Source: Hemiscyllium ocellatum (Eukaryota). From it: 64,000 nucleotides of DNA. Both the position numbers and the translations under genes were made by a program. Where the stretch lies: contig NC_083413.1 in assembly GCF_020745735.1 (NCBI RefSeq), positions 98,676,409 to 98,740,408 of the forward strand. Reading direction: 5' to 3'. Below, one piece after another: positions 14,570 to 64,000 of the stretch. Below the pieces are notes generated by a model that was given only the letters and a program-made list of their open reading frames with translations, had not been told where the DNA came from and did no database searches. Each line of letters begins with the position of its first letter. The stretch's first letter is position 1.

Positions 14570-15150
14570 CAATGTCTTAGTTAAAAATTTGAAGCAATCA
14601 CAACTCCAAACATTTACACAATATCACTATGGATCTTCCTTGAGTCCAAAAAAAAATCCCTTTGATCAATGATTTCTAAAATTTGTTCCCATATCTTTTT
14701 TTGAAGGACGTTTTCAAATAACTTGAAGTGCAAATGGTTCACATCAGTCGGAATACAGTAACATTTCATGTGTTACCCCACACAAAAAAAATCAAGCAAT
14801 TTTGTTATCACGAGTTGTTCTAAGCAAGTCTAGGATGGACTGTTTTATCAAACAAAATCATTTCCAATGTTGTGAGGGCTCGTCTATCTTCTGTGCAATG
14901 GTCTGAATTTTGTATCTGAATGCAGATGTAACTGGCTGCTCTGGGTAAAAGTACAGTTTGTGCCTTTCACATTGTTAATGTGTATTGCTGACTTTAGTTG
15001 AATAAAGTGATGTTGTCCCAGGCATCGTCTGGCACCATTCATTAGACCATTAATTTCCACATTGCTAGCCGGAGAGTCAGGTGGAGTTTATTAATATCAT
15101 TGAACCGAAGGCTTGGAATATTTCCGGTATGAATCATGTGAATTAGAGCC
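14570..15150. repeat. Nested inverted repeat, arm A
   Basis: Reverse complement of ~16779-17373 (e.g. gatcttccttgagtcc vs ggactcaaggaagatc; ccattaatttccacatt vs atgtggaaattaatgg); estimated 80-85% identity. Confidence 0.85.
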
Positions 15151-16778
15151 TCTGAACGAGACAAAGTAGGAAAGATGAATTGAGGAAAGATGAAGTTTTC
15201 ACGACAGAGAGAGATCACTTCGCCCATTACACCTGTATCATGTGAAAACAGAACCTTCCAGCCAACACCCACTTTATAGCATGTTGTCCATAACCCTGCA
15301 GGTGATAGCACTTGAAGTAAACATTCGGGAACATTGTGTAGGGTCTAATCCATTATCAACATAGATATGATCTCCAATGCTGTAAATCCTGGCTTATGGG
15401 GAAAAAAGTAGGGGCAGAACACCCATTTCTAAACGTTGTTTCTCAGGACGTTTTGACAATTCTTGACTTAATATCATTGTAAACTGACATGAAAAAAATG
15501 CAGACATGTTCCCCAGAAACGCTGACTGCAACATACCTTTACTCAGTCAAGATCAGCAAGATGAATTAAGAAAGTTTTTAAAAATCTTTCTTTTAACTGA
15601 TTATTGACAACACGGATTTCACAAAGTGAAAAGTACAGAAGGGAAGGGTGGAGGGCTGGGTGTGGACGATGTTCACTTGTGAGAAACAAAGCTCACACAC
15701 TTCAATAATTTCAGTCCGAGACAAAATCTGAATCAGTGGTGCCCTTTATTTTACTCTTGCAAGACGGTGTGATGTCCACTTTCCACAAGGCAGGGACACA
15801 CACACTGAATTCAACTAATACACGATATTTATGTAATTTGGTTTCTATTTTTTTATTTCATTGCTCCTCCCCTGTTTACATCTTCCACTTCCCTAAGACC
15901 GGCGCCCTCCTTGTCTGTGACAAATGCTTATTTCTGGCCTCACAAGGCTGTTTGACCTCATCCCGCTGTGGCCCATTGTTAGGCATATCCTTTCTTCACT
16001 ATTATCTATTCCCTCCATCTGTGCCTTCCCCTACCATACTGATCCTTATGAACCTTTTAATTGGGGTTTGTTCCTGTGTTTCAGTAAAAGTGGGAAACAG
16101 ATGTTTATACCTACTGTTTGTACAGGCGTATCTAGCTTAACTCCCTCCCCTCACAGCATCTTATCTATTCGTCTGTAATATCTACCATTGTTTTGCAGTC
16201 ACGTTTCATTGTTGCATACAATTTTAGTGAATACAAAAACAATTATGTATTTCCTCCACATCGTTTCCATTCTTGTTGACTCAGCTCTTGGCTGAAACAA
16301 TTACACACTGGTGTGAGTTCATTTACTTTGTATAAGTAATTATAATTGCAGAAGTAACACTACTTTACCTATATCCCACACACTGTTCCCTGATGTCTGG
16401 TTGCATTTGTGAGCAACAGGTGAACCTGCGAACCAGATTCAGGATGGTACTGCAGGTATTTCAGCAGATACTGTGTAAACGGAATTCTCCCATAAATCAG
16501 CAATGACATGAACATTTATTTTTTATGGTGTTTGAAACCAAATAAAATTGAACAATATGCTGGGACAAGTTCCTTTCATTTCTTTGAACTAGTATCAAGG
16601 GACACTCTCTGTGGGCCTGGGGTGGCAGGAGGATCTTTAACAGCAGAATGTGAGGGAACAAAGTTACCGTTGGAAATCCAGATAGACTGGAACTTGTTTC
16701 ACTGGAGGGTGAGAGTTCGGCGGGGGGGGGGGGGGGGACCTCATATAAGTTTATAAAGCCATGAGTGGAAAGGTGAAT

Positions 16779-17373
16779 GGCTCTAATTTACATGATTCAT
16801 CTTGGAAATGTACAAAGCTTTCGTTTCAAAAATATCACATATCAATAAACTCCACCTGATCCTCTGGCGAGTGATGTGGAAATTAATGGTCTAATTAATG
16901 GTGCCAGACGATGCCTGGGGCAACATCCCTTTATTCAACTAAAGTCAGCAATATACATTAACAATGTGAAAGGCGCAAACTGTACTTTTACCCAGAGCAG
17001 CCAGTTTCATCTGCAGTCAGACACAACTTCAAAATTCAGACCATTGCACAGAAGATAGACGAGCCCTCACAACACTGGAAATGATTTTGTTTGATAAAAG
17101 AATTCATCGTAGACTTCCTCAGAGCAACTCATGTCAACAAACTTGTTTTTTTTGTGTGTGGGGTAACACACGAAATGTCACTTTAATACGATTGATGTGA
17201 ACCACTTGCATTTCAGAAGTTATTTGAAAACGTCCATCACATTAGATACGCGAATAAATTTTACAAATCATTGATCAAAGGGGACAATCTTTTTTGGACT
17301 CAAGGAAGATCCATAGTAATATTTTGTAAATGTTTGGAGCTGGGATTGTTCTCAATTTTTGACCCAGACATTG
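16779..17373. repeat. Nested inverted repeat, arm B
   Basis: Partner of 14570-15150, separated by a ~1.6-kb spacer. Confidence 0.85.
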
Positions 17374-17399
17374 TTGTATTTTCCCTATGGTGGGGGATT

Positions 17400-17685
17400 T
17401 CAACAATAGGGAACATGTTTTACAATGAGAGGAGAAAAATTTTTAAAACGATATCAGAGGCAGCTTTTTATACAGAGAATGGTTTGTGTGTGGGATGATC
17501 TGGTGGTGGATACTTACAACCTATAGAAGACATTTGGATAAGTAAATGAATATCAAATGTTTGGAAGGATATGGGCCAAGTACACACAGGTGGGATTAGT
17601 TTAGTTTGGGATTATGACTGGCATGGACTGGTTGGACTGAAGTGTCTGTTTCCATGCTGTCTCACTCCATGACTCTATGACTATT
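17400..17685 (+). mobile_element. CR1-type LINE 3' tail
   Basis: tttatacagagaatggtttgtgtgtggg...tgtctgtttccatgctgt...atgactctatgactat, CR1-like 3' end with short tail repeat. Confidence 0.7.
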
Positions 17686-18841
17686 TATCAATTTTTCTCA
17701 ATATTAAACAGTGCTGTAGTGATCCTCGAATGAACTGTTGATGTTTAGGTTGTGTCTGAGACTCTGCGAATATTTCCTTCAATGAGAGGAGTAACTAGTT
17801 CTCCAAGTTTCACAACTGAAAAATAAACTTTTCTCCAGTATTGTTGCTGAGTAGATTTGTTCCTGCAGAGGCAGTGGTTATGGTCTGCAGTTTGCTTTCC
17901 ACCAACTGGTCAACAGTGAGACAAAATATCTTTGATCCCCTGCAGAAACTCCACCCGATTCCAGTAAATGAACCTGGGAACTCAAGGACCTTTTCTGCAG
18001 TCAGCTTAATTGCTGCCAACTATTGTATCTGGTCGATTAAAGGGAAAATGAATCAACTAAAGTAAAATCCTACCAAACAAACTATATTTTCCCATTTACT
18101 CACAATGGATACATTTCACTTGGCATTTCTTCTTTAAAAAGGAAAGTCACTGAATACAGCATTCACTGTATGACTATCAGAAACAGGACATTGAATGCAG
18201 TGATGTTCTGGTTAGTTCAGCCTGTTTATTGAGTATCTTTAAAGCTCCTGAATATGAAGTTAATGGATCCAAAATCCCACATTGCAGTAACATTTGTTAT
18301 CATCTCAAAGTAAATTAACAAACTTGAATTGGTTCAAACTCACATCACTTGGTACACCATTCACTGATTCATTTATCTCATTAAAACTGAGTGGGCCCTT
18401 TATACATGGTTAACACTGGTGTCGTGTAACAGCGAATTTCTGCTTATTTTTATGAGTTAACTGCCCCTGTCAGAGCTATCAGTGAGCAGAGAAATGTACT
18501 GTTTATAACCTACATTCGCGGTAATGATTATTGTAATACTCTCTAATTTAACCAAACACTCCTGATGTACCCAGACAGTTACCTGCAATGGTTTAGATGT
18601 TGAGGATTTTATTAAAAAAAAACGTATGGACTGTCCTGTTCTAGTTCATTAGATGCTCTTTCAAAAGTTTACCTAGGTGTTATGTATCACTGCCAACTCA
18701 CTTTTTGTTTCTCCGGCACACAGCTTTCCTTTACTATGCATTTTAAAAAATTTGAAAAAAAAGATGCAAGGAGAGACATTCTGCAATGTAAGGAGGTGCT
18801 TCTAATCTCCGGGTCCAAGCTGTTTAGTGATATCCACTCAC

Positions 18842-19287
18842 ATTCTGAACATAATCACTTTAGACCTGCTCCATATTAGGTTGCCTAAATGGAATTTAGA
18901 AACGCAGATTAGAAATGGGATGTTATTTTGTAAAGTGAGAGAGACGTTGAGTGACAGCAAAAATAAAGTCACTCATTTTGTTGGTTAATAATATGATTGA
19001 AGTTCTTTTTAGCTTTATCTGCTTGTGGTGGAATGTAGAATTAAAGGGAGTTAACTTCTAATTGAATATTCTGAATATAATCACTTTGGACACGCTCTGT
19101 ATTCAGTTGCCTAAATTGAATTTTGAAATGTTTAGTATGAATTACATGTTATTTTGTAGTGGGACAGAGACTGGCAGTGTCCTGGGGAAATAAAACTCAA
19201 TTGTTTTACTAGCTAGTAATATGTTTGAACTTTGATTTTAGTTTTATCTGTTTGTGAATGAATGTAGAAATAAAGGGAGGTAACTTC
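18842..19287 (+). repeat. Old ~226-bp tandem duplication upstream of the VH promoter
   Basis: attctgaacataatcacttt..gttgcctaaat..aatgtagaattaaagggagttaacttc (from 18842) repeated as attctgaatataatcacttt..gttgcctaaat..aatgtagaaataaagggaggtaacttc (from 19068). Confidence 0.85.
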
Positions 19288-19563
19288 CGGATGGATTTAT
19301 TTTAAAACAAAATACTTGCAACTATCATGTGAAATAGACCTGAAGGTACTCAATTTTACTTCCACCATTAAAAAAAACACTCCCAAAGAAGCTATTCAGC
19401 AAAATAAATATCCCAAGATGTGTATATATCCATGTTTAAGCGTAACCTGGTAAATACATGAGCCCATGTGTTGGGGCTGTGCAAGCTGAGACCAGGATCC
19501 AGTCTCAGCCTCCAGCAGGAAACCAACAGGCGGAAGCTGTGAGCCTGCCCTTTCCGATGGCCA

Positions 19564-19570
19564 TATAAAT
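19564..19570 (+). promoter_or_regulatory. TATA box of VH promoter (+ copy)
   Basis: TATAAAT 93 bp upstream of the leader ATG; Ets-like cggaag at 19531; no ATGCAAAT octamer seen in the preceding ~400 bp. Confidence 0.75.
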
Positions 19571-19656
19571 CCTAGGCACTGGACCGTAATTCAACACTCC
19601 GGGATCGGCTTTGTTTAGAAAGATCTTGACAGAACCGCTTCCCAGAAGTTATCAGA

Positions 19657-19705
19657 ATGATTGTGTCGACAATTTTTCTCAGTTTATTACTGACTTTCTT
19701 ATCAT
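19657..19705 (+). CDS. IGHV: IgH leader exon (+ copy), MIVSTIFLSLLLTFLS
   Basis: ATG 19657, hydrophobic signal peptide, phase-1 GT donor at 19706, 107-bp intron to AG at 19811-19812. Confidence 0.95.
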
Positions 19706-19812
19706 GTGAGTGTTTTTTTTTGTTTAAGTCTGTCTTTGTTGCTGTTTCAATGTTAGTCTACCTCAGGAATGTAAAAGTAATGCTCATGGTTTATTTCTTG
19801 TCTTTTTTAAAG

Positions 19813-20117
19813 GTGTCCAGTCGGAGATTGTTTTGACCCAGCCAGAGGCAGAGACTGGCCATCCCTCAGGCAGCCTGACACTGACCTGTAAAACCAGCGG
19901 GTTCGATCTCAGCAGCAGCTACATGCACTGGGTCCGCCAGGTTCCCGGCCAGGGTCTGGAGTGGCTGCTGTACTACTATAGTTCATCCAGCAATAACTAT
20001 GCACCAGCGATTCAGGGTCGATTTACTGCGTCCAAAGACAATTCAAACAACATTTTCTCGTTGAAAATGACTAACCTGAAGATCGAAGACACCGCCATCT
20101 ATTACTGTGCAAGATAC
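19813..20117 (+). CDS. IGHV: IgM VH segment (+ copy), [18 protein letters not shown]...YYCARY
   Basis: Open frame with conserved Cys, WVRQ and YYCAR; directly followed by an RSS. Confidence 0.98.
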
Positions 20118-20156
20118 CACAGCGAGAGGAACCAGGGCTGGACCCGTTCAAAAACA
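20118..20156 (+). other. VH 3' RSS, 23-bp spacer
   Basis: CACAGCG 20118-20124, 23 nt, TCAAAAACA 20148-20156. Confidence 0.95.
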
Positions 20157-20504
20157 GCTCGAGGGAACATTTTGTCAATTCCATCATAAACTGATGGTCA
20201 GTTTGAGTTTTAAATGCAATTATACCAACTGCGATCTGAAGCAGACCTCAGGCTGCCTCTTACAAAGCTATCAAAGAGGAAATGTACCATTTAAACTAGG
20301 AAACTGGTGACACAATGGGACAATGTTTTAGGCATGTCATATGTACTGCTAACACTTCCATCAATTAAATGCTGGGACAAAATATATCTGACAGCTCAGG
20401 AAATCACTGCTAATTGTTATGTCAACTATGGCATTCATTCTAAACATGATCAGTACTAAATGGCTCTTTCAAATGAAAATTGAGACCTAGAGTAAAGAAC
20501 AGAG

Positions 20505-20584
20505 AATGAGTGTACTGGTCTACATCATTGTGATACTACAGTGGGTCACAGTGCTGTGCACAGCGACATCCTCATACAATAACC
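20505..20584 (+). other. D1 segment ATACTACAGTGGGT (20533-20546) with 12-bp 5' RSS and 22-bp 3' RSS
   Basis: 5': AATGAGTGT (weak nonamer)-12-CATTGTG; 3': CACAGTG-22-ACAATAACC. All three D1 frames are open. Confidence 0.93.
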
Positions 20585-20840
20585 ACTGACAAGGATTTAT
20601 CTCAAATTGGTGATTTCTACCGTGGCAGGAGCGTGAAATAATGTGAGATGCAATTTAAACACAATCCAGTCGGGCTAGTTTGTACAAATGTAGAATTATT
20701 TTCTACCTTCTTCGTGTTGATTGTCAAGTTAAATGCAGACCAAACCTGGAAAAGTATTCCAAGCTTTCAAAATACAATGAATAGTAAAAGCTGAAATAAT
20801 GCACCAAATCATTTTTAAAGGAGTCTGAATCACTGCTTTC

Positions 20841-20865
20841 TAGGAAGTGAAGAAATTATTTGCAT
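20841..20865 (+). promoter_or_regulatory. Ets-like site plus octamer between D1 and D2
   Basis: AGGAAGTGA 20842-20850 and ATTTGCAT 20858-20865; the motifs are seen directly, function is inferred. Confidence 0.4.
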
Positions 20866-20887
20866 TTTACAGTTTACAGTCTGTCAT

Positions 20888-20958
20888 AGTATTTGACACA
20901 ACGTGTCTCACAGTGATATAGCTGGAGTGACACTGCAATTATGATCAGTACAAAAACC
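20888..20958 (+). other. D2 segment ATATAGCTGGAGTGA (20916-20930) with 12/12 RSS
   Basis: 5': AGTATTTGA-12-CACAGTG; 3': CACTGCA-12-ACAAAAACC. Confidence 0.92.
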
Positions 20959-21284
20959 TATTCAGCCTCCATTGTTTGAAAATAGTCAGTGATTACTTCT
21001 ACAAACCGTCTTAACTTGCAGTGCAGTATTAGTTCTGTGGGGCTTTATGCCAGTATCACTATTTAATTTGTAAAAGTGTTGGGTAATTATTGATACACCA
21101 GTTGGGGATTTTGAGAATCAGCTATGTGTTACTCTGTGAAGTATAAAACAGTATTAAAATTTATCAAGAATGATCAGAATTCACTCGCGCAATTATGTGA
21201 TGAAGATTTATCGTGACTTTATTTTGCCTGTGGTTCTGAAAATTTAAAATGATGGTAGATTTTTGATTTGTTTTATGCAGAGCT

Positions 21285-21323
21285 AGTTATTGTGTGATCC
21301 AGTCCAGAGAATGTAACACTGTG
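21285..21323 (+). other. JH 5' RSS, 23-bp spacer
   Basis: AGTTATTGT 21285-21293, 23 nt, CACTGTG 21317-21323. Confidence 0.93.
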
Positions 21324-21371
21324 ACTATCTTGGCTACTGGGGCCAAGGGACCATGGTGACAGTGACTTCAG
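21324..21371 (+). CDS. IGHJ: JH segment (+ copy), YLGYWGQGTMVTVTS
   Basis: WGxG motif, phase-1 GTAAG donor at 21372. Confidence 0.98.
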
Positions 21372-21916
21372 GTAAGAACTTTGAACATTCTTAGTGACTT
21401 TTTAAAAACTTTCTATTCATGTGACTAATTTCTGAATTAAATGAAACTCAGATTCTGTGCTGAGTTTGGTTTGGTTCGGATTGATTTTTGTTCAGACTGA
21501 TTATAGACTTCAGTTAAGGCTCAGCAAATAGTTAAAATGGTGATGATGGAGTCATTTGCTCAGTGTATCTCTTTTTTTTGATCAGATGGACGTTCTATGT
21601 GGCTGGGTTACTTGAAACACCTAATGTCTCTTAATCAGTCAGCTATAAATAATGTTTAATGTCAGTGACACCCTGACTGTGAGTTTTATTATCAACAACA
21701 AATGCTACAAATTCAAAGATGTTCAAGATATTACCAAACATGACTAAAATATGCTAAAATATCATTATTCATTTCTTGAATATATGTTCTTACCATGATT
21801 ATATTTTCTCATTTATTTTGTTAATTTTGTTGATGACAGGCAGGTTAGAAACTGTCATCAAAGTTTCTTGCGGTGCTATATTGCATTCTGGTGATTAGAT
21901 TCGGAGTTTGTTTTAC

Positions 21917-22200
21917 TTGATTCTGTTGAATTGAGTTGATTGGATTTTGGCTTTGTTTTAGTTGATTCGGGTTGAACTGTGTTGATTGGATTCTGACTTT
22001 GTTTTTACTTGGTTTTGTTGAATTGTGTTGATTGACTTTTGAAATGGTTTTATTTGATTCTGTTGAATTGAATTGGTTGGATTCTGATTATGTTTCATTC
22101 AAATCTGTTGTTTTAAGTTGATTGGATTCTGATTTTATTTTCCTTGATTCTGTTGAATTGAGTTGATTGGATTCTTATTCAGTTTGTGAAATTGATCTGC
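21917..22200 (+). repeat. ~45-bp T/G-rich minisatellite, ~6 units
   Basis: Unit starts at 21917, 21962, 22009, 22054, 22098, 22144; core ttgattctgttgaattgagttgattggatt. Confidence 0.9.
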
Positions 22201-23788
22201 GTTTTCGTGCTTTCTGAATCGATGTTTTCTTTCTGGTGAGGAGATTGACTCTCTGGAATACTTTTCATTACCAATATTTGTGAAGTTCTTTTGTTTTTCA
22301 TGAATCATTTCTGCATTTGTTAAACTTATATGACACATTTTTCTCTGCTTGATTGAAAACATGACATCCATTTGTAACGGTCTGAAAAACAACTTAAGGC
22401 AGAAACCCAGATGTGTGAGAAATGAAAAAAAAATGAGTTTTTAATGGATTGACTTTAAACAAAAAACTCCGTTCTAATTGTAAACGAACTGACTTTTGTT
22501 TTAAGTAGCCTCATTCAAAATAAAATTTGGGACCTAAATCTGAAACTGCAGAATTGATCAGATTACGTAATTGAAACTAACTTAAAATTATAATGTGGTA
22601 ATATTTGTCCATTCAGTAATTTTGTTTTGACCATGAGGTGATTAATCAATATATGCCTTCAACCCCACTCTACTGTGCGCTGCACAAGATTGTCATGATC
22701 AGGAAGGGTGTGCAGGTTAGAAATAAATTGAACTATTGCCAGAAACGTTACAGCTTTAAGTGTTAAGTCCCCTCACAAACAAGGTTGCTATTATGACCTG
22801 TTATTTCTATTCAATTTAATCATTAGTTTGCTTGATTCTGAGCAGCTTTGTTAGACTTCAATTTGGTTTTATTTGTGAGGTGACATCATGTTCTTGGTTC
22901 TGTTGAAAATGTTTGCAGAGCTAGTTCTGCTGCAAACATACCGTGTTGTGATCTGGTGATCGTTGATCTGTTGAGGAGGGACTGTGCTTGGGTAACATTA
23001 AATGTGTTATATTTGGGAAACCGTTTCTGGTTTCTACATTGTTTTTGCAATGTTAACACGGTTGGTGACAGTGAACTGCTCTTTCCTCATTCAATGCAAT
23101 CAGCATGCGAGTTACAATTTCATAAAGTCTATTATAAAGTGAAAGGCAAATTGCACAGGTTTTAGAAATGAAGGGAAAACAGATACCTTCAGGTGCTATT
23201 TTTACTTAAAATAAATAATTAAGGATTAATCTAATCCATGCTTTACAATCCAAATTCGAAACTCAACTATCTAGTTCAATCACAAGGTCTGTCTTTAAGC
23301 AGTTTACAAGTCATAGAGAAATATAAATAGAATTTCAAAAGTCTAATGTTCTAATTGTTCTTGCTCTCGAGCAAAAATGCCATGACTGTGCTATAATTGA
23401 TCAAGAAACACCTTTCAATTCCGCTGTACACTACATACATATTTTTCTGGCTGGAAAAGATCATTGGCAAAGACCATTTGGAAATTCTGCTCAATTCTAT
23501 GAAGAACAGATCAGTTTCACTGCTTTGAACAGTTTCACATATAACTTGAGTTAATTAATTGTTATGTCCCTGATTAAACTGGATTTGCAGGATAAAAATA
23601 AAACATTAACTGAATTATTTAACCTGCACAGTACTTTAGGTGTTCCCAATCTGTGCATGTTAAATAAATAGTTACATTTTACAACAAAATATCAACTGAA
23701 GAGTCATTCTTCGGGAAACAACTGCTATAGTGAATTATGTGACCAACCAAATTTCGAATTAATTAAAGTAATCCACTCATGAACTCCA

Positions 23789-24130
23789 GGGCAGCATGGT
23801 GGCTCAGTGATTGGCATTGCTGCCTCACAGCGCCAGGGTCCCAAATTTGATTCCACCCTCGGGTGACTGCCTGTGTGGAGTTTGCACATTCTCCCTGTGT
23901 CTGCGTGGGTTTCCTTCGAGTGCTGTGGTTTCCTACCACAGTCCAAAAGATGTGCAGGTCAGGTGATTGTGCAGTTTAGCACAGCCATAGTGTTCAGGGA
24001 TGTCTAGGTTAGGGTGCATTAGTCAAGGACAAATATAAATTAGGGGGAATGGGTCTGGGTGGGCTACTTACTGTTCAGAGGGTCAGTGTGGAATTGTTGG
24101 GCCAAATGGCCCGTTTCCATACTGTAGGAA
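23789..24130 (+). mobile_element. tRNA-derived SINE (HE1-like)
   Basis: gggcagcatggtggctcagtg..gctgcctcacagcgcc head; homologous to 6361-6670. Confidence 0.85.
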
Positions 24131-24372
24131 CTCTCCTCTTAAAACCATGGGAGTACTTGCTGCAAACGCAGAAAATTCATTTTACATCGATGTGTTCAGG
24201 CGTATGCAGAGTTCACAAATTTGCAGAAGACATGAACTAGAGGATAACAGAGCACATTGTTTATTCAAACACTGAAAATAGAGTAATATTTTTTTAATTA
24301 ATATACTTGATCGATTTATTGCAATGTAGCGATCTGAAGGAATCTGCTCACATTAGTTCAGTGTGACAATCA

Positions 24373-24662
24373 TTTAGATTAGATTTCCTGCAGTATGTAT
24401 CAGGCCATTTGGCCCAACAAGTCCACACTGACCCTCTGAAGAGTAACCCACCCAGACCCATTCCCCTACCCTATATTTACCCCTGACTAATGCACCTAAC
24501 ACTATAGACAATATAGCATGACTAGTTCACCTGACTTGCACATCTTTGGATTTTGGGAGGAAATCCACACAGACACAGGGGAGATTGTGTAAACTCCACA
24601 TAGGCAGTCACCCGAGGCTGGAACCGAGCCTGGGTACCTGGATCTGTGAGGCAGCAGTGCCC
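24373..24662 (-). mobile_element. tRNA-derived SINE (HE1-like)
   Basis: Antisense copy with tail ttagattagat at ~24374 and head gaggcagcagtgc at ~24650. Confidence 0.85.
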
Positions 24663-27377: not shown

Positions 27378-27580
27378 AGGAGAAAGTGAGGACTGCAGAT
27401 GCTGGAGATCAGAGCTGAAAATGTGTTGCTGGAAAAGCACAGCAGGTCAGGCAGCATCAAGGAGCAGGAGAATCGACGTTTCGGGCATGAGCCCTTCTTC
27501 AGGAAGGGCTCCTTGGATGCTGCCTGCTCCTTGGATGCTGCCTGACCTGCTGCGCTTTTCCAGCAATACATTTTCAGCAG
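27378..27580. mobile_element. Hairpin retro-insertion, family 1, with TSD
   Basis: Inverted arms; ttgctaaaaatg duplicated at 27366-27377 and 27581-27592. Confidence 0.9.
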
Positions 27581-27679
27581 TTGCTAAAAATGAGGGAAGC
27601 TTCATTCCTATTATATGATTAAGAAATAGCTCTGTTCATTCAGTGAAAACACAGTCAAATCACTCAAAAGGAAACCATG

Positions 27680-27883
27680 ATTTGGAGATGCTGGTGTTGG
27701 ACTGGGGTGTACAAAGTTAAAAATCACACAACCCCAGGTTATAGTCCAACAGGTTTAATTGGAAGCACACTAGCTTTTGGAGTGACGCTCCTTTATCAGG
27801 TGATAGTGGAGCGTCACTCCGAAAGCTAGTTTTCTTCCAATTAAACCTGTTGGACTATAACTTGGTGTTGTGTGATTTTTAAA
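27680..27883. mobile_element. Hairpin retro-insertion, family 2, with TSD
   Basis: Inverted arms aaaatcacacaac..ggagtgacgctcc / ggagcgtcactcc..gttgtgtgatttt; flanked by aaaaggaaaccatg (27666-27679) and aaaaggaaatcatg (27884-27897). Confidence 0.9.
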
Positions 27884-28524: not shown

Positions 28525-28755
28525 GGGCTTCATGTTGTAATTGTCCAAAACATTGGAATGAACTGCCAGAGGAAGTGGTAAATGCAGAGATCGGTCCCAC
28601 ATTGAGAAGCCATTTGAACAGCTACAGGAACTGGATCGGTCTGGATGGATATGGACCAAAGGCAGGCAAGTGGAATGAGTTTAATTTGGGAACTCTGGTC
28701 AGCATGGATGGGCTGGACCAAGGGAACTGTTTCTGTGCTGTACGACTTTATGTCT
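28525..28755 (+). mobile_element. CR1-type LINE 3' tail
   Basis: WNELPEEVV-like translation and CR1 tail ending ctgtttctgtgctgtacgac. Confidence 0.7.

Positions 28756-30444: not shown

Positions 30445-30479
<35 letters not shown>
30445..30479 (+). repeat. (TGC)11 microsatellite
   Basis: Direct count; the mirror copy at 48143-48168 has 8 CAG units. Confidence 0.95.
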
Positions 30480-30480
<1 letters not shown>

Positions 30481-48142: not shown

Positions 48143-48168
48143 CAGCAGCAGCAGCAGCAGCAGCAGCA
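48143..48168 (-). repeat. (CAG)8 microsatellite, mirror of 30445-30479
   Basis: Direct count. Confidence 0.95.
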
Positions 48169-50721: not shown

Positions 50722-50925
50722 TTTAAAAATCACACAACACCAAGTTATAGTCCAACAGGTTTAATTGGAAGAAAACTAGCTTTCGGAGTGACGCTCCACT
50801 ATCACCTGATAAAGGAGCGTCACTCCAAAAGCTAGTGTGCTTCCAATTAAACCTGTTGGACTATAACCTGGGGTTGTGTGATTTTTAACTTTGTACACCC
50901 CAGTCCAACACCAGCATCTCCAAAT
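50722..50925. mobile_element. Hairpin retro-insertion, family 2 (mirror copy)
   Basis: Mirror of 27680-27883, TSD at 50708-50721 and 50926-50939. Confidence 0.9.
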
Positions 50926-51024
50926 CATGGTTTCCTTTTGAGTGATTTGACTGTGTTTTCACTGAATGAACAGAGCTATTTCTTAATCATATAATAGGAA
51001 TGAAGCTTCCCTCATTTTTAGCAA

Positions 51025-51227
51025 CTGCTGAAAATGTATTGCTGGAAAAGCGCAGCAGGTCAGGCAGCATCCAAGGAGCAGGCAGCATCCAAGGAGCCCT
51101 TCCTGAAGAAGGGCTCATGCCTGAAACGTCGATTCTCCTGCTCCTTGATGCTGCCTGACCTGCTGTGCTTTTCCAGCAACACATTTTCAGCTCTGATCTC
51201 CAGCATCTGCAGTCCTCACTTTCTCCT
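51025..51227. mobile_element. Hairpin retro-insertion, family 1 (mirror copy)
   Basis: Mirror of 27378-27580; one TSD carries a substitution. Confidence 0.9.
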
Positions 51228-54200: not shown

Positions 54201-56389
54201 GAAATCTAATCTAAATGATTGTCACACTGAACTAATGTGAGCAGATTCCTTCAGATCGCTACATTGCAATAAATCGATCAAGTATATTAATTAAAATAAA
54301 TATTACTCTATTTTCAGTGTTTGAATAAACAATGTGCTCTGTTATCCTCTAGTTCATGTCTTCTGCAAATTTGTGAACTCTGCATACGCCTGAACACATC
54401 GATGTAAAATGAATTTTCTGCGTTTGCAGCAAGTACTCCCATGGTTTTAAGAGGAGAGTTCCTACAGTATGGAAACGGGCCATTTGGCCCAACAATTCCA
54501 CACTGACCCTCTGAACAGTAAGTAGCCCACCCAGACCCATTCCCCCTAATTTATATTTGTCCTTGATTAATGCACCCTAACCTAGACATCCCTGAACACT
54601 ATGACTGTGCTAAACTGCACAATCACCTGACCTGCACATCTTTTGGACTGTGGTAGGAAACCACAGTGCCCGAAGGAAACCCACACAGACACAGGGAGAA
54701 TGTGCAAACTCCACACAGGCAGTCACCCGAGGGTGGAATCAAATTTGGGACCCTGGCGCTGTGAGGCAGCAATGCCAATCACTGAGCCACCATGCTGCCC
54801 TGGAGTTCATGAGTGGATTACTTTAATTAATTCGAAATTTGGTTGGTCACATAATTCACTATAGCAGTTGTTTCCCGAAGAATGACTCTTCAGTTGATAT
54901 TTTGTTGTAAAATGTAACTATTTATTTAACATGCACAGATTGGGAACACCTAAAGTACTGTGCAGGTTAAATAATTCAGTTAATGTTTTATTTTTATCCT
55001 GCAAATCCAGTTTAATCAGGGACATAACAATTAATTAACTCAAGTTATATGTGAAACTGATCAAAGCAGTGAAACTGATCTGTTCTTCATAGAATTGAGC
55101 AGAATTTCCAAATGGTCTTTGCCAATGATCTTTTCCAGCCAGGAAAATATGTATGTAGTGTACAGGGGAATTGAAAGGTGTTTCTTGATCAATTATAGCA
55201 CAGTCATGGCATTTTTGCTCAAGAGCAAGAACAATTAGAACATTAGACTTTTGAAATTCTATTTATATTTCTCTATGACTTGCAAACTGCTTAAAGACAG
55301 ACCTTGTGATTGAACGAGATAGTTGAGTTTCGAATTTGGATTGTAAAGCATGGATTAGATTAATCCTTAATTATTTATTTTAAGTAAAAATAGCACCTGA
55401 AGGTATCTGTTTTCCCTTCATTTCTAAAACCTGTGCGATTTGCCTTTCACTTTATAATAGACTTTATGAAATTGTAACTCGCATGCTGATTGCATTGAAT
55501 GAGGAAAGAGCAGTTCACTGTCACCAACCGTGTTAACATTGCAAAAACAATGTAGAAACCAGAAACAGTTTCCCAAATATAACACATTTAATGTTACCCA
55601 AGCACAGTCCCTCCTCAACAGATCAACGATCACCAGATCACAACACGGTATGTTTGCAGCAGAACTAGCTCTGCAAACATTTTCAACAGAACCAAGAACA
55701 TGATGTCACCTCACAAATAAAACCAAATTGAAGTCTAACAAAGCTGCTCAGAATCAAGCAAACTAATGATTAAATTGAATAGAAATAACAGGTCATAATA
55801 GCAACCTTGTTTGTGAGGGGACTTAACACTTAAAGCTGTAACGTTTCTGGCAATAGTTCAATTTATTTCTAACCTGCACACCCTTCCTGATCATGACAAT
55901 CTTGTGCAGCGCACAGTAGAGTGGGGTTGAAGGCATATATTGATTAATCACCTCATGGTCAAAACAAAATTACTGAATGGACAAATATTACCACATTATA
56001 ATTTTAAGTTAGTTTCAATTACGTGATCTGATCAATTCTGCAGTTTCAGATTTAGGTCCCAAATTTTATTTTGAATGAGGCTACTTAAAACAAAATTCAG
56101 TTCGTTTACAATTAGAACGGAGTTTTTTGTTTAAAGTCAATCCATTAAAAACTCGTTTTTTTTTCATTTCTCACACATCTGGGTTTCTGCCTTAAGTTGT
56201 TTTTCAGACCGTTACCAATGGATGTCATGTTTTCAATCAAGCAGAGAAAAATGTGTCATATAAGTTTAACAAATGCAGAAATGATTCATCAAAAACAAAA
56301 GAACTTCACAAATATTGGTAATGAAAAGTATTCCAGAGAGTCAATCTCCTCACCAGAAAGAAAACATCGATTCAGAAAGCACGAAAACG

Positions 56390-56672
56390 CAGATCAATTT
56401 CACAAACTGAATAAGAATCCAATCAACTCAATTCAACAGAATCAAGGAAAATAAAATCAGAATCCAATCAACTTAAAACAACAGATTTGAATGAAACATA
56501 ATCAGAATCCAACCAATTCAATTCAACAGAATCAAATAAAACCATTTCAAAAGTCAATCAACACAATTCAACAAAACCAAGTAAAAACAAAGTCAGAATC
56601 CAATCAACACAGTTCAACCCGAATCAACTAAAACAAAGCCAAAATCCAATCAACTCAATTCAACAGAATCAA
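56390..56672 (-). repeat. ~45-bp minisatellite (mirror copy)
   Basis: Mirror of 21917-22200. Confidence 0.9.
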
Positions 56673-57217
56673 GTAAAACAAACTCCGAATCTAATCACCA
56701 GAATGCAATATAGCACCGCAAGAAACTTTGATGACAGTTTCTCACCTGCTTGTCATCAACAAAATTAACAAAATAAATGAGAAAATATAATCATGGTAAG
56801 AACATATATTCAAGAAATGAATAATGATATTTTAGCATATTTTAGTCATGTTTGGTAATATCTTGAACATCTTTGAATTTGTAGCATTTGTTGTTGATAA
56901 TAAAACTCACAGTCAGGGTGTCACTGACATTAAACATTATTTATAGCTGACTGATTAAGAGACATTAGGTGTTTCAAGTAACCCAGCCACATAGAATGTC
57001 CATCTGATCAAAAAAAAGAGATACACTGAGCAAATGACTCCATCATCACCATTTTAACTATTTGCTGAGCCTTAACTGAAGTCTATAATCAGTCTGAACA
57101 AAAATCAATCCGAACCAAACCAAACTCAGCACAGAATCTGAGTTTCATTTAATTCAGAAATTAGTCACATGAATAGAAAGTTTTTAAAAAGTCACTAAGA
57201 ATGTTCAAAGTTCTTAC

Positions 57218-57265
57218 CTGAAGTCACTGTCACCATGGTCCCTTGGCCCCAGTAGCCAAGATAGT
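57218..57265 (-). CDS. IGHJ: JH segment (- copy), YLGYWGQGTMVTVTS
   Basis: Identical to + JH; RSS heptamer 57266-57272, 23 nt, nonamer 57296-57304. Confidence 0.98.
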
Positions 57266-57630
57266 CACAGTGTTACATTCTCTGGACTGGATCATACAAT
57301 AACTAGCTCTGCATAAAACAAATCAAAAATCTACCATCATTTTAAATTTTCAGAACCACAGGCAAAATAAAGTCACGATAAATCTTCATCACATAATTGC
57401 GCGAGTGAATTTTGATCATTCTTGATAAATTTTAATACTGTTTTATACTTCACAGAGTAACACATAGCTGATTCTCAAAATCCTCAACTGGTGTATCAAT
57501 AATTACCCAACCCTTTTACAAATTAAATAGTGATACTGGCATAAAGCCCCACAGAACTAATACCGAACTGCAAGTTAAGATGGTTTGTAGAAGTAATCAC
57601 TGACTAGTTTCAAACAATGGAGGCTGAATA

Positions 57631-57700
57631 GGTTTTTGTATTGATCATAATTGCAGTGTCACCCAGCTATATCACTGTGAGACACGTTGTGTCAAATACT
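57631..57700 (-). other. D2 segment ATATAGCTGGGTGA (57659-57672) with 12/12 RSS
   Basis: Same RSS heptamers and nonamers as + D2; coding part is 14 nt rather than 15. Confidence 0.92.
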
Positions 57701-58003
57701 ATGACAGACTGTAAACTGTAAAATGCAAATAATTTCTTCACTTCCTAGAAAGCAGTGATTCAGACTCCTTTAAAAATGATTTGGTGCATTATTTCAGCTT
57801 TTACTATTCATTGTATTTTGAAAGCTTGGAATACTTTTCCAGGTTTGGTCTGCATTTAACTTGACAATCAACACGAAGAAGGTAGAAAATAATTCTACAT
57901 TTGTACAAACTAGCCCGACTGGATTGTGTTTAAATTGCATCTCACATTATTTCATGCTCCTGCCACGGTAGAAATCACCAATTTGAGATAAATCCTTGTC
58001 AGT

Positions 58004-58083
58004 GGTTATTGTATGAGGATGTCGCTGTGCACAGCACTGTGACCCACTGTAGTATCACAATGATGTAGACCAGTACACTCATT
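58004..58083 (-). other. D1 segment (58042-58055) with 12/22 RSS
   Basis: Identical to + D1, including the weak 5' nonamer. Confidence 0.93.
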
Positions 58084-58431
58084 CTCTGTTCTTTACTCTA
58101 GGTCTCAATTTTCATTTGAAAGAGCCATTTAGTACTGATCATGTTTAGAATGAATGCCATAGTTGACATAACAATTAGCAGTGATTTCCTGAGCTGTCAG
58201 ATATATTTTGTCCCAGCATTTAATTGATGGAAGTGTTAGCAGTACATATGACATGCCTAAAACATTGTCCCATTGTGTCACCAGTTTGCTAGTTTAAATG
58301 GTACATTTCCTCTTTGATAGCTTTGTAAGAGGCAGCCTGAGGTCTGCTTCAGATCGCAGTTGGTATAATTGCATTTAAAACTCAAACTGACCATCAGTTT
58401 ATGATGGAATTGACAAAATGTTCCCTCGAGC

Positions 58432-58470
58432 TGTTTTTGAACGGGTCCAGCCCTGGTTCCTCTCGCTGTG
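58432..58470 (-). other. VH 3' RSS, 23-bp spacer (- copy)
   Basis: CACAGCG (58470-58464), 23 nt, TCAAAAACA (58440-58432). Confidence 0.95.
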
Positions 58471-58775
58471 GTATCTTGCACAGTAATAGATGGCGGTGTC
58501 TTCGATCTTCAGGTTAGTCATTTTCAATGAGAAAATGTTGTTTGAATTGTCTTTGGACGCAGTAAATCGACCCTGAATCGCTGGTGCATAGTTATTGCTG
58601 GATGGAGTATAGTAGTACAGCAGCCACTCCAGACCCTGGCCGGGAACCTGGCGGACCCAGTACATGTAGTAGCTGCTGAGATCGAACCCGCTGGTTTTAC
58701 AGGTCAGTGTCAGGCTGCCTGAGGGACGGCCAGTCTCTGCCTCTGGCTGGGTCAAAACAACCTCCGACTGGACAC
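58471..58775 (-). CDS. IGHV: IgM VH segment (- copy), [18 protein letters not shown]...YYCARY
   Basis: 305 nt, open, conserved Cys/Trp, AG acceptor at 58776-58777. Confidence 0.98.
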
Positions 58776-58880
58776 CTTTAAAAAAGACAAGAAATAAACC
58801 ATGAGCATTACTTTTACATTCCTGAGGTAGACTAACATTGAGACAGCAACAAAGACAGACTTAAACAAAAAAACACTCAC

Positions 58881-58929
58881 ATGATAAGAAAGTCAGTAAT
58901 AAACTGAGAAAAATTGTCAACACAATCAT
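58881..58929 (-). CDS. IGHV: IgH leader exon (- copy), MIVLTIFLSLLLTFLS
   Basis: ATG at 58929, GT donor, 105-bp intron. Confidence 0.95.
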
Positions 58930-59015
58930 TCTGATAACTTCTGGGAAGCGGTTCTGTCAAGATCTTTCTAAACAAAGCCGATCCCGGAGTGTTGAATTAC
59001 GGTCCAGTGCCTAGG

Positions 59016-59022
59016 ATTTATA
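59016..59022 (-). promoter_or_regulatory. TATA box of VH promoter (- copy)
   Basis: TATAAAT, mirror of 19564-19570. Confidence 0.75.
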
Positions 59023-61211
59023 TGGCCATCGGAAAGGGCAGGCTCACAGCTTCCGCCTGTTGGTTTCCTGCTGGAGGCTGAGACTGGATCCTGGTCTCAG
59101 CTTGCACAGCCCCAACACATGGGCTCATGTATTTACCAGGTTACGCTTAAACATGGATATATACACATCTTGGGATATTTATTTTGCTGAATAGCTTCTT
59201 TGGGAGTGTTTTTGTTAAATGGTGGAAGTAAAATTGAGTACCTTCAGGTCTGTTTCACATGATAGTTACAAGTATTTTGTTTTAAAATAAATCCATTCGG
59301 AAGTTACCTCCCTTTATTTCTACATTCATTCACAAACAGATAAAACTAAAATCAAAGTTCAAACGTATTACTAGCTAGTAAAACAATTGAGTTTTATTTC
59401 CCCAGGACACTGCCAGTCTCTGTCCCACTACAAAATAACATGTAATTCATACTAAACATTTCAAAATTCAATTTAGGCAACTGAATACAGAGCGTGTCCA
59501 AAGTGATTATATTCAGAATATTCAATTAGAAGTTAACTCCCTTTAATTCTACATTCCACCACAAGCAGATAAAGCTAAAAAGAACTTCAATCATATTATT
59601 AACCAACAAAATGAGTGACTTTATTTTTGCTGTCACTCAACGTCTCTCTCACTTTACAAAATAACATCCCATTTCTAATCTGCGTTTCTAAATTCCATTT
59701 AGGCAACCTAATATGGAGCAGGACTAAAGTGATTATGTTCAGAATGTGAGTGGGTATCACTAAACAGCTTGGACCCGGAGATTAGAAGCACCTCCTTACA
59801 TTGCAGAATGTCTCTCCTTGCATCTTTTTTTTCAAATTTTTTAAAATGCATAGTAAAGGAAAGCTGTGTGCCTGAGAAACAAAAAGTGAGTTGGCAGTGA
59901 TACATAACACCTAGGTAAACTTTTGAAAGAGCATCTAATGAACGAGAACAGGACAGTCCATACGTTTTTTTTAATAAAATTCTCAACATCTAAACCATTG
60001 CAGGTAACTGTCTGGGTACATCAGGAGTGTTTGGTTAAATTAGAGAGTATTACAATAATCATTACCGCGAATGTAGGTTATAAACAGTACATTTCTCTGC
60101 TCACTGATAGCTCTGACAGGGGCAGTTAACTCATAAAAATAAGCTGAAATTCGCTGTTACACGACACCAGTGTTAACTATGTATAAAGGGCCCACTCAGT
60201 TTTAATGAGATAAATGAATCAGTGAATGGTGTACCAAGTGATGTGAGTTTGAACCAATTCAAGTTTGTTAATTTACTTTGAGATGATAACAAATGTTACT
60301 GCAATGTGGGATTTTGGATCCATTAACTTCATATTCAGGAGCTTTAAAGATACTCAATCAACAGGCTGAAGTAACCAGAATGTCATTGCATTCAATGTCC
60401 TGTTTCTGATAGTCATATAGTGAATGCTGTATTCTGTGACTTTCCTTTTTAAAGAAGAAATGCCAAGTGAAATGTATCCATTGTGAGTAAATGGGAAAAT
60501 ATAGTTTGTTTGGTAGGATTTTACTTTAGTTGATTCATTTTCCCTTTAATCGACCAGATACAATAGTTGGCAGCAATTAAGCTGACTGCAGAAAAGGTCC
60601 TTGAGTTCCCAGGTTCATTTACTGGAATCGGGTGGAGTTTCTGCAGGGGATCAAAGATATTTTGTCTCACTGTTGACCAGTTGGTGGAAACAAACTGCAG
60701 ACCATAACCACTGCCTCTGCAGGAACACATCTACTCAGCAACAATACTGGAGAAAAGTTTATTTTTCAGTTGTGAAACTTGGAGAACTAGTCACTCCTCT
60801 CATTGAAGGAAATATTCGCAGAGTCTCAGACACAACCTAAACATCAACAGTTCATTCGAGGATCACTACAGCACTGTTTAATATTGAGAAAAATTGATAA
60901 ATAGTCATAGAGTCATGGAGTGAGACAGCATGGAAACAGACACTTCAGTCCAACCAGTCCATGCCAGTCATAATCCCAAACTAAACTAATCCCACCTGTG
61001 TGTACTTGGCCCATATCCTTCCAAACATTTGATATTCATTTACTTATCCAAATGTCTTCTATAGGTTGTAAGTATCCACCACCAGATCATCCCACACACA
61101 AACCATTCTCTGTATAAAAAGCTGCCCCTGATATCATTTTAAAAATTTTTCTCCTCTCATTGTAAAACATGTTCCCTATTGTTGAAATCCCCCACCATAG
61201 GGAAAATACAA

Positions 61212-64000
61212 CAATGTCTGGGTCAAAAATTGAAAACAATCCCAGCTCCAAACATTTACAAAATATCACTATGGATCTTCCTTGAGTCCAAAAAAGATTG
61301 TCCCCTTTGATCAATGATTTGTAAAATTTATTCGCGTATCTAATGTGATGGACGTTTTCAAATAACTTCTGAAATGCAAGTGGTTCACATCAATCGTATT
61401 AAAGTGACATTTCGTGTGTTACCCCACACACAAAAAAAACAAGTTTGTTGACATGAGTTGCTCTGAGGAAGTCTACGATGAATTCTTTTATCAAACAAAA
61501 TCATTTCCAGTGTTGTGAGGGCTCGTCTATCTTCTGTGCAATGGTCTGAATTTTGAAGTTGTGTCTGACTGCAGATGAAACTGGCTGCTCTGGGTAAAAG
61601 TACAGTTTGCGCCTCTCACATTGTTAATGTATATTGCTGACTTTAGTTGAATAAAGAGATGTTGCCCCAGGCATCGTCTGGCACCATTAATTAGACCATT
61701 AATTTCCACATTGCTCGCCAGAGGATCAGGTGGAGTTTATTGATATGTGATATTTTTGAAACGAAAGCTTCGTACATTTCCAGGATGAATCATGTAAATT
61801 AGAGCCATTCACCTTTCCACTCATGGCTTTATAAACTTATATGAGGTCACCCCCCACCCCCCGAACTCTCACCCTCCAGTGAAACAAGTTCCAGTCTATC
61901 TGGATTTCCAACGGTAACTTTGTTCCCTCACATTCTGCTGTTAAAGATCCTCCTGCCACCCCAGGCCCACAGAGAGTGTCCCTTGATACTAGTTCAAAGA
62001 AATGAAAGGAACTTGTCCCAGCATATTGTTCAATTTTATTTGGTTTCAAACACCATAAAAAATAAATGTTCATGTCATTGCTGATTTATGGGAGAATTCC
62101 GTTTACACAGTATCTGCTGAAATACCTGCAGTACCATCCTGAATCTGGTTCGCAGGTTCACCTGTTGCTCACAAATGCAACCAGACATCAGGGAACAGTG
62201 TGTGGGATATAGTGTTAGTGTTACTTCTGCTATTATAATTACTTATACAAAGTAAATGAACTCACACCAGTGTGTAATTGTTTCAGCCAAGAGCTGAGTC
62301 AACAAGAATGGAAACTATATAGAGGAAATACATAATTGTTTTTGTATTCACTAAAATTGTATGCAAGAATGAAACGTGACTGCAAAACAATGGTAGATAT
62401 TACAGACGAATAGATAAGATGCTGTGAGGGGAGGGAGTTAAGCTAGATATGCCTGTACAAACAGTAGGTATAAACATTTGTTTCCCACTTTTACTGAAAC
62501 ACAGGAACAAACCCCAATTAAAAGGTTCATAAGGATCAGTATGGTAGGGGAAGGCACAGATGGAGGGAGTAGATAATAGTGAAGAAAGGATATGCCTAAC
62601 AATGGGCCACAGCGGGATGAGGTCAAACAGCCTTGTGAGGCCAGAAATAAGCATTTGTCACAGACAAGGAGGGCGCCGGTCTTAGGGAAGTGGAAGATGT
62701 AAACAGGGGAGGAGCAATGAAATAAAAAAAAGAAACCAAATTACATAAATATCGTGTATTAGTTGAATTCAGTGTGTGTGTCCCTGCCTTGTGGACAGTG
62801 GACATCACACCGTCTTGCAAGAGTAAAATAAAGGGCACCACTGATTCAGATTTTGTCTCGGACTGAAATTATTGAAGTGTGTGAGCTTTGTTTCTCACAA
62901 GTGAACATCGTCCACACCCAGCCCTCCACCCTTCCCTTCTGTACGTTTCACTTTGTGAAATCCGTGTTGTCAATAATCAGTTAAAAGAAAGATTTTTAAA
63001 AACTTTCTTAATTCATCTTGCTGATCTTGACTGAGTAAAGGTATGTTGCAGTCAGCGTTTCTGGGGAACATGTCTGCATTTTTTTCATGTCAGTTTACAA
63101 TGATATTAAGTCAAGAATTGTCAAAACGTCCTGAGAAACAACGTTTAGAAATGGGTGTTCTGCCCCTACTTTTTTCCCCATAAGCCAGGATTTACAGCAT
63201 TGGAGATCATATCTATGTTGATAATGGATTAGACCCTACACAATGTTCCCGAATGTTTACTTCAAGTGCTATCACCTGCAGGGTTATGGACAACATGCTA
63301 TAAACTGGGTGTTGGCTGGAAGGTTCTGTTTTCACATGATACAGGTGTAATGGGCGAAGTGATCTCTCTCTGTCGTGAAAACTTCATCTTTCCTCAATTC
63401 ATCTTTCCTACTTTGTCTCGTTCAGAGGCTCTAATTCACATGATTCATACCGGAAATATTCCAAGCCTTCGGTTCAATGATATCAATAAACTCCACCTGA
63501 CCCTCCGGCTAGCAATGTGGAAATTAATGGTCTAATTAATGGTGCCAGACGATGCCTGGGACAACATCACTTTATTCAACTAAAGTCAGCAATATACATT
63601 AACAATGTGAAAGGCACAAACTGTACTTTTACCCAGAGCAGCCAGTTACATCTGCATTCAGATACAAAATTCAGACCATTGCACAGAAGATAGACGAGCC
63701 CTCACAACATTGGAAATGATTTTGTTTGATAAAACAGTCCATCCTAGACTTGCTTAGTACAACTTGTGATAACAAAATTGCTTGATTTTTTTTGTGTGGG
63801 GTAACACATGAAATGTTACTGTATTCCGACTGATGTGAACCATTTGCACTTCAAGTTATTTGAAAACGTCCTTCAAAAAAAGATATGGGAACAAATTTTA
63901 CAAATCATTGATCAAAGGGATTTTTTTTTGGACTCAAGGAAGATCCATAGTGATATTGTGTAAATGTTTGGAGCTGTGATTGCTTCAAATTTTTAACTAA
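61212..64000. repeat. Mirror of the nested inverted repeat (arms ~61212-61806 and ~63427-64000)
   Basis: Mirror of 14570-17373. Confidence 0.85.

What the first reader, a model, noticed from the sequence alone, without database searches (positions are those of the whole stretch)
14577..64000. Two IgM clusters arranged tail-to-tail as a giant near-perfect palindrome
Seen: arms of at least 23.3 kb with all exons, RSSs and transposon insertions mirrored around a ~2.8-kb centre. Known: shark IgH genes are multiple VDDJ-C miniloci. Inference: a convergent palindromic pair could exchange sequence arm-to-arm and produce antisense read-through. Caveat: a placeholder gap is in the centre, so the orientation, or even paralogy versus two haplotypes, may be a scaffolding artefact.
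Basis: partly seen in the sequence, partly recalled or inferred. Interest (0 to 1): 0.75.

Follow-up and report, generated by a model that had tools for sequence, protein, structure and literature searches.

The report
Mirrored shark IgM clusters across gap
Two nearly identical shark IgM antibody gene clusters do face each other across an assembly gap, but the "palindrome centre" only reflects where two contigs stop, so the mirror arrangement is unproven and otherwise ordinary.

Summary
The inverted repeat is real. Window 14577-37916 matches the reverse complement of 40694-64000 over 23.4 kb at 98.5% identity (240 substitutions, 31 indels), and every IgM element is mirrored. Neither end of the repeat is biological. 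The outer end is the window edge. The inner end of the left arm is the last base before the 200-N gap, 90 nt short of where its Cmu4 exon should begin. The "2.8-kb centre" is the gap plus the right cluster's own Cmu4 exon and 3' flank. Neither cluster has membrane exons in the assembled sequence, so several kb are missing and no symmetry axis has been sequenced. Divergence is even at about 1% (K2P 0.0104) with no long identical tracts, so there is no sign of recent arm-to-arm exchange. CpG transitions are enriched, so the differences are real mutations and not consensus errors. Public short-read contigs show extra variants and skewed variant fractions, which fits a family of roughly ten or more near-identical clusters. 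My odds: true convergent paralogues with an unassembled middle about 0.45; real paralogues wrongly placed or oriented about 0.3; allele or false duplication about 0.2. Earlier notes of this scan report another IgM palindrome, on a different piece of this genome.

The parts
14577..37916 (+). Left copy ('left arm'): an IgM cluster with 5 kb of upstream sequence. It is cut by the contig end 349 nt after Cmu3.
   Evidence: the contig end is visible
37917..38116 (.). Assembly gap of 200 N. It is a placeholder. It must hide at least the left Cmu4, both sets of membrane exons and any true centre.
38117..40693 (-). The alleged centre. It is the right cluster's Cmu4 exon (40212-40603; stop 40212-40214; AATAAA 40211-40216), 90 nt of intron and 2.1 kb of 3' flank. 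No membrane exon was found here.
40694..64000 (-). Right copy ('right arm'): the mirror image of 14577-37916, cut by the window end.
19657..20157 (+). Left cluster: leader 19657-19706, V exon 19813-20117, and V RSS (heptamer CACAGCG, 23-nt spacer, nonamer) 20118-20157.
20533..21371 (+). Left cluster: D1 20533-20546, D2 20916-20930 and J 21324-21371, each with flanking RSSs. The cluster is unrearranged.
31572..31880 (+). Left Cmu1 exon. It has no differences from the right copy.
34984..35295 (+). Left Cmu2 exon (the acceptor could instead be at 34991).
37251..37559 (+). Left Cmu3 exon, the last exon before the contig end.
58431..58929 (-). Right cluster: leader 58880-58929, V exon 58471-58775 and V RSS 58431-58470.
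57218..58055 (-). Right cluster: D1 58042-58055, D2 57659-57672 (1 nt shorter than the left D2) and J 57218-57265.
46742..47050 (-). Right Cmu1 exon.
43327..43638 (-). Right Cmu2 exon.
41051..41359 (-). Right Cmu3 exon.

Best explanation
Contig A (ending at 37916) and contig B (starting at 38117) each carry one copy of the same IgM heavy-chain cluster unit of more than 23 kb. I read them as two distinct germline paralogues from a young multi-copy family of near-identical IgM clusters, lying convergently (3' end to 3' end) on the chromosome as the product of an inverted segmental duplication. The real middle is not assembled. It should hold the left Cmu4, both pairs of membrane exons and any spacer, at least several kb in all, and is represented only by a 200-N placeholder. 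Each cluster would work as an ordinary independent shark IgM minilocus: RAG joins V-D1-D2-J within the cluster, and the product is spliced to that cluster's own Cmu exons. The two clusters contribute slightly different germline CDR1, CDR2 and D2. The copies have drifted apart evenly to about 1%, so they are not being homogenised; the mirror layout is a historical by-product and not a working device. Shown: the repeat itself, its cut ends, the even divergence, the intact elements, and the presence of extra variants in reads. Inferred: paralogy, true adjacency and orientation, and the size of the missing middle.
For: Both assembled gene parts are intact and collinear. The differences are real mutations. 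Transitions outnumber transversions 148 to 92, and 41 of 240 substitutions are CpG transitions although CpG sites are only 2.8% of positions. Divergence (K2P 0.0104) is about five times the parental nucleotide diversity of 0.002 reported for the species that earlier notes name (PMC10587355). That assembly is trio-binned and was purged of duplicates, and both steps work against retained alleles. Short-read contigs from three samples in two studies show a second sequence type about 1% away inside the 'centre' (an 890-nt contig with 10 differences). They also show letters absent from both arms at 12 listed sites. Minor-variant shares run from about 4-8% up to 50%. Contig depths are 10-25 times those of the rarest variant contigs. 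Together this indicates many near-identical copies, so paralogues at this distance are expected. A related bamboo shark is reported to have 37 IgM clusters.
Against: Nothing sequenced links the two contigs. Adjacency and orientation rest on a scaffold join alone. The left arm ends exactly at the contig end, the pattern also produced by a misplaced or allelic contig. Both contigs are seen only over 26-38 kb, so their sizes, and hence how reliably they were oriented, are unknown. No usable read depth was available, because all runs were contigs. In a multi-copy family, trio binning by parent-specific words can fail, so a maternal allele could have survived. The same genome has probable false duplications at other gaps (unchecked notes).
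Confidence: 0.45

Rival explanations
1. Both contigs are real, distinct paralogous clusters of the same family, but the join is wrong. Contig B is misplaced or flipped, or other unplaced cluster-bearing scaffolds belong between the two. In that case there is no palindrome, and the arrangement may be tandem or unlinked.
For: The join is a 200-N placeholder with no sequence support. Both contigs break inside a cluster, as expected where a family of ten or more near-identical copies defeats assembly and read mapping. The assembly is reported to have 1,937 minor scaffolds. Earlier notes place many IgM clusters on separate pieces and next to gaps.
Against: At 5 or more listed sites in 3.4 kb, the two copies share letters that are rare or unseen in the read contigs. 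They therefore look like close relatives within the family, which fits a local duplication better than a random juxtaposition. The scaffolds were curated.
Confidence: 0.3
2. False duplication: the two arms are the two alleles of one cluster. A maternal or unpurged haplotype contig was kept in the paternal assembly and scaffolded beside its partner in the wrong orientation.
For: The overlap runs to the last base of contig A, and contig B simply extends 2.6 kb further, which is the classic look of an overlapping haplotig. There are no large insertions or deletions between the arms. Reads from a multi-copy family can lack parent-specific words and so be dealt to both haplotype bins. Other probable false duplications are noted in this genome.
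Against: The 1.04% substitution divergence, even over 23 kb, is about five times the reported diversity. The assembly was trio-binned and passed through purge_dups. Variant shares in the read contigs are not 50:50 and more than two sequence types exist, so one locus with two alleles cannot explain the data by itself.
Confidence: 0.2
3. Fold-back assembly artefact: the same DNA was assembled twice on opposite strands, for example from hairpin or chimeric long reads.
For: The layout is inverted and abuts a contig end.
Against: The 240 substitutions show a germline mutation spectrum with sixfold CpG-transition enrichment, and only 31 indels accompany them. Consensus errors from long noisy reads would be mostly indels and far rarer.
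Confidence: 0.03

Closest known systems
Shark IgM heavy-chain cluster (minilocus: VH-D1-D2-JH-Cmu1-4 plus membrane exons, many copies per genome)
   Same: Each arm has a split leader and V exon with a 23-spacer RSS, two D segments with RSSs, one J, a J-Cmu1 intron of about 10 kb, and C1-set exons. The right copy ends in a mu tailpiece. The unit size of about 19 kb from V to Cmu4 agrees with the 18-20 kb clusters described for horn shark (abstract of PMC2191167).
   Different: The left copy lacks Cmu4 and both copies lack membrane exons in the assembled sequence, because the contigs end there and not because of decay. The copies are unusually alike in introns and flanks (98.5%).
Conversion-maintained palindromes of sex chromosomes (e.g. 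the human Y ampliconic palindromes; from general knowledge)
   Same: Long inverted arms of more than 20 kb that carry whole genes in mirror image.
   Different: Those arms are more than 99.9% identical through ongoing arm-to-arm gene conversion and have a sequenced spacer. Here the arms are 98.5% identical with evenly spread differences and no conversion tracts, and no spacer has been sequenced.
False duplications at contig ends or gaps in long-read vertebrate assemblies (retained haplotigs, overlapping contig ends)
   Same: A near-identical copy that starts or stops exactly at a gap. Other gaps of this genome carry similar notes.
   Different: The orientation is inverted and not direct. Divergence is about five times the reported heterozygosity. 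The assembly was trio-binned and purged. The reads indicate a real multi-copy family.
Oppositely oriented Ig clusters in fish light-chain loci (zebrafish IgL; PMC3014032, title and abstract only)
   Same: Ig V-J-C type clusters that occur in both orientations on one chromosome.
   Different: Those are light-chain clusters, and inversional rearrangement between clusters is proposed for them. Here the RSS-bearing ends are more than 36 kb apart and face outward. No inter-cluster rearrangement was tested.

Membership tests
Shark IgM heavy-chain cluster | A V exon (V-set) with a split leader, followed by an RSS | tested here: met
   V-set E=6e-19. The leader, intron, V exon and the CACAGCG-23-nonamer RSS were read directly. 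Both copies are open.
Shark IgM heavy-chain cluster | Two D segments and one J, each with RSSs, within about 1.5 kb of V and unrearranged | tested here: met
   D1, D2 and J, with their heptamers and nonamers, were read. The right copy is the same apart from a 1-nt shorter D2 and two spacer changes.
Shark IgM heavy-chain cluster | Four C1-set Cmu exons, the last carrying the mu secretory tailpiece | tested here: inconclusive
   The right copy has four C1-set exons, and its last one best matches the Cmu4 and tailpiece of solved IgM structures (E about 1e-51). The left copy has only three, because the contig ends 90 nt before the fourth.
Shark IgM heavy-chain cluster | Two membrane (TM) exons downstream of Cmu4 | tested here: not met
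   No hydrophobic exon candidate lies in the 2.1 kb after the right Cmu4. The sequence stops at the gap, so they are absent from the assembly, not shown to be absent from the genome.
Conversion-maintained gene palindrome | Arms more than 99.9% identical, or with long identical tracts from recent conversion | tested here: not met
   Identity is 98.5%. The longest identical tract is 599 nt, within chance (P=0.22). The variance-to-mean ratio of differences in 500-nt bins is 1.7.
Conversion-maintained gene palindrome | Continuous sequence through a defined spacer or axis | not testable with these tools
   The axis, if there is one, lies in the N run. The only runs on offer were short contigs. Gap letters were not to be looked up.
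False duplication (retained allele) | Half read depth over both copies | not testable with these tools
   All four runs were contigs. The tool itself states that such depth is not a copy number.
False duplication (retained allele) | Divergence within the range of heterozygosity, and only two sequence types per individual | tested here: not met
   K2P is 0.0104 against a reported pi of 0.002. Read contigs show third letters and minor shares of about 4-8%. This holds only if the species named by earlier notes is right, and contig depths are rough.

The most novel reading that the evidence does not exclude
IgM (and perhaps kappa) clusters of this shark multiply as inverted pairs through fold-back duplication. 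This pair would then be an intact, potentially functional example about 1% old. Together with the contiguous 32-kb IgM palindrome noted elsewhere in the genome, it would point to fold-back duplication as a recurrent way in which the cluster family expands.
Probability: 0.2. Interest if true: 0.55.

Novelty: new member of a known kind. Interest (0 to 1): 0.27.

Why it matters
How the dozens of shark antibody miniloci are arranged and multiplied along chromosomes is poorly documented. A verified convergent pair of intact clusters would add one data point on how the family grows, and a natural pair for studying cluster-by-cluster exclusion. As it stands, the main value is cautionary. The apparent giant palindrome cannot be taken from this assembly. 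Counts of IgM clusters in this genome are unreliable wherever near-identical copies meet gaps.

Tried and rejected
1. Read evidence. The one read-laying run could use only short assembled contigs (Logan). These give no usable depth, no long spanning pieces and no strand-switch joints, so paralogy versus allelism and the orientation were left open.

2. Finding the source animal. A second run search on the left flank (the first attempt failed as busy) was meant to identify the source animal by a word share near 1. All runs of the species hold only 0.60-0.66 of the flank and 0.52-0.61 of the arm stretch, so none stands out.

3. Membrane exons. Two hydrophobicity scans found none in 38117-40211.

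4. Simple repeats as the cause of the break. Only one 29-nt tandem repeat lies near the gap, and contig A ends in ordinary sequence.

5. Conversion tracts or an identity gradient towards the centre. None was found; if anything, divergence is highest in the last 3 kb.

6. Literature. Five searches found no description of tail-to-tail IgM clusters in sharks. This is a limited library, so absence there proves little.

7. Neighbouring windows. Look-ups beyond this window are not possible.

8. Gap content.

Full report
**What is in the sequence**

The window has a single N run, 37917-38116. A repeat search and a BLAST of the two sides of the gap give one long inverted match. It pairs 14577-37916 with 64000-40694. 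A global alignment has 23,378 columns, with 240 substitutions (148 transitions, 92 transversions) and 31 indel events totalling 109 nt, the largest being 23 nt. The mirror repeat is therefore real and far beyond chance.

Both of its limits are technical:
- 14577 pairs with 64000, the last base of the window.
- 37916 is the last base of the left contig.
- The two copies match to that last base. The right copy then simply continues, and 90 nt later reaches a splice acceptor and an open C1-set exon.

**Gene content**

The left copy lies on the plus strand:

| Element | Coordinates |
|---|---|
| Leader | 19657-19706 |
| V exon | 19813-20117 |
| V RSS (23-nt spacer) | 20118-20157 |
| D1 | 20533-20546 |
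| D2 | 20916-20930 |
| J | 21324-21371 |
| Cmu1 | 31572-31880 |
| Cmu2 | 34984-35295 |
| Cmu3 | 37251-37559 |

The left contig then ends. The right copy, on the minus strand, has the same elements at mirrored places. It also has Cmu4 at 40212-40603, with the secretory tailpiece and an AATAAA overlapping the stop codon. Pfam gives V-set for the V exon and C1-set for all four C exons. The last exon best matches Cmu4 and the tailpiece of solved IgM structures.

The alleged 2.8-kb centre is therefore 200 N plus the right cluster's own last secretory exon and 2.1 kb of its 3' flank. I found no membrane exon in that flank. Both genes lose their 3' ends at contig ends. If the layout is true, the gap hides at least the left Cmu4 region, both sets of membrane exons and the real axis. 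That is several kb, not 200 nt. The two sides of the gap are not continuous with each other.

**Nature of the differences**

- Substitutions run at about 10 per kb along the whole length.
- The longest identical tract is 599 nt, around Cmu1. This is no longer than a uniform scatter gives (simulated P=0.22).
- There is no rise in identity towards the gap.
- CpG positions are 2.8% of sites but carry 41 of the 240 substitutions as transitions.

These are germline mutations. They are not consensus errors, and the two arms are not the same DNA assembled twice. K2P distance is 0.0104.

Coding sequence is no better conserved than non-coding: 20 changes in 1,285 coding nt, 15 of them changing the amino acid, against 1.0% elsewhere. 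Eight of the coding changes fall in the V exon, mostly in CDR1 and CDR2. This agrees with the separate note s1-198201. D2 differs by one nucleotide in length. All assembled elements of both clusters look usable.

**Evidence from public runs**

Two run searches found runs of one species (three to four samples, two studies) and of related species. All were kept only as short assembled contigs. No run holds more than 0.66 of the sampled words, in the arms or in the left flank, so the source animal cannot be picked out.

I laid four runs on 38117-44116. The contigs are 130-900 nt long and break at nearly every variable site. I compared the listed differences with the arm alignment:
- Of the 25 listed places inside the arm part, 13 are arm-differing sites, and at all 13 the contigs carry the left-arm letter.
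- The other 12 are places where both arms agree but the contigs show another letter. At five or more of these, the arms' shared letter is rare or unseen.
- Inside the "centre" there is also a second sequence type about 1% away, for example an 890-nt contig with 10 differences.
- Where both letters are seen away from contig ends, the minor share ranges from about 4-8% to about half.
- Ordinary contigs here are 10-25 times deeper than the rarest variant contigs in the same run.

I read this as a family of roughly ten or more near-identical copies of this stretch. The two arms appear to be close relatives of each other and minor members of that family. This is an inference: contig depth is not a copy number, and no single-copy baseline could be measured. 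It fits the 37 IgM clusters reported for a related bamboo shark (PMC8692893). It also means the "centre" is not unique sequence.

**Assembly context**

Earlier notes of this scan call this genome the epaulette shark. I could not verify that. If it is right, the reference has these properties (PMC10587355):
- It is the paternal half of a trio-binned assembly of noisy long reads.
- It was purged of duplicates.
- It was scaffolded with linked reads, optical maps and Hi-C, then curated.
- The parents' nucleotide diversity is 0.002.

The arms differ five times more than that, and evenly. Together with trio binning and purging, this argues against two alleles of one locus. It does not exclude alleles, because reads from a multi-copy family can escape parent-specific binning. 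The same notes list probable false duplications at other gaps, and a contiguous 32-kb IgM fold-back palindrome on another piece. These are leads that pull in both directions, and none was checked here.

**Verdict**

My odds:

| Reading | Odds |
|---|---|
| Two true paralogous clusters lying convergently, with an unassembled middle | about 0.45 |
| True paralogues wrongly placed or oriented | about 0.3 |
| A retained allele (false duplication) | about 0.2 |
| A fold-back artefact of the same DNA | negligible |

Whichever holds, the copies are not kept alike by exchange. Each cluster would work as an ordinary independent IgM minilocus. The published pedigree offers a clean test through co-segregation of arm-private variants. 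Spanning long reads or optical maps would settle the structure.

Noticed in passing
window 42517-42916 (mirror at about 35.7-36.1 kb): A short interspersed repeat inside the Cmu2-Cmu3 intron. Read-contig depth here is thousands of times that of its surroundings (about 10^6 in one run), and many contigs branch off at 42645-42700 and 42806. It is a very high-copy transposon family of this genome.
   Followed up: no
window 14570-15150 and 16779-17373 (mirrored at 61212-61806 and 63427-63994): Each arm contains its own 600-nt inverted repeat at 85% identity, with 1.6 kb between the halves, about 2.5 kb upstream of the leader. It may be a pair of transposon copies or a hairpin-type element.
   Followed up: no
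window 19813-20117 versus 58471-58775: The V exons differ at 8 of 305 nt (2.6%, against 1% background). Seven of the changes alter the protein, mostly in CDR1 (SSSYMH versus SSYYMY) and CDR2 (YYYSSSS versus YYYTPSS). This agrees with the separate note s1-198201.
   Followed up: partly
window 12001-14000 and 32001-34000 (mirror 44001-46000): Strong strand-asymmetric composition (GC skew about -0.32 to -0.34). This includes most of the Cmu1-Cmu2 intron. The two plus-strand stretches are not similar to each other by BLAST. The cause is unknown.
   Followed up: no
window 75-401 (minus strand) and 2188-2463: Fragments of a LINE-type endonuclease/reverse-transcriptase gene in the left flank (Exo_endo_phos_2, E=1e-5, just under Pfam's cut-off).
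   Followed up: partly
window 30445 / 48169 and 36033 / 42602: The largest length differences between the arms include a (TGC)3 microsatellite step and a 23-nt insertion in the right copy. No transposon is present in one arm only.
   Followed up: yes
window 38117-44116 in runs of related species: Runs of four other, coded species hold 0.23-0.34 of the words of this stretch and 0.12-0.33 of the left flank. For the nearest species this implies roughly 2% divergence, about twice the distance between the two arms.
   Followed up: partly
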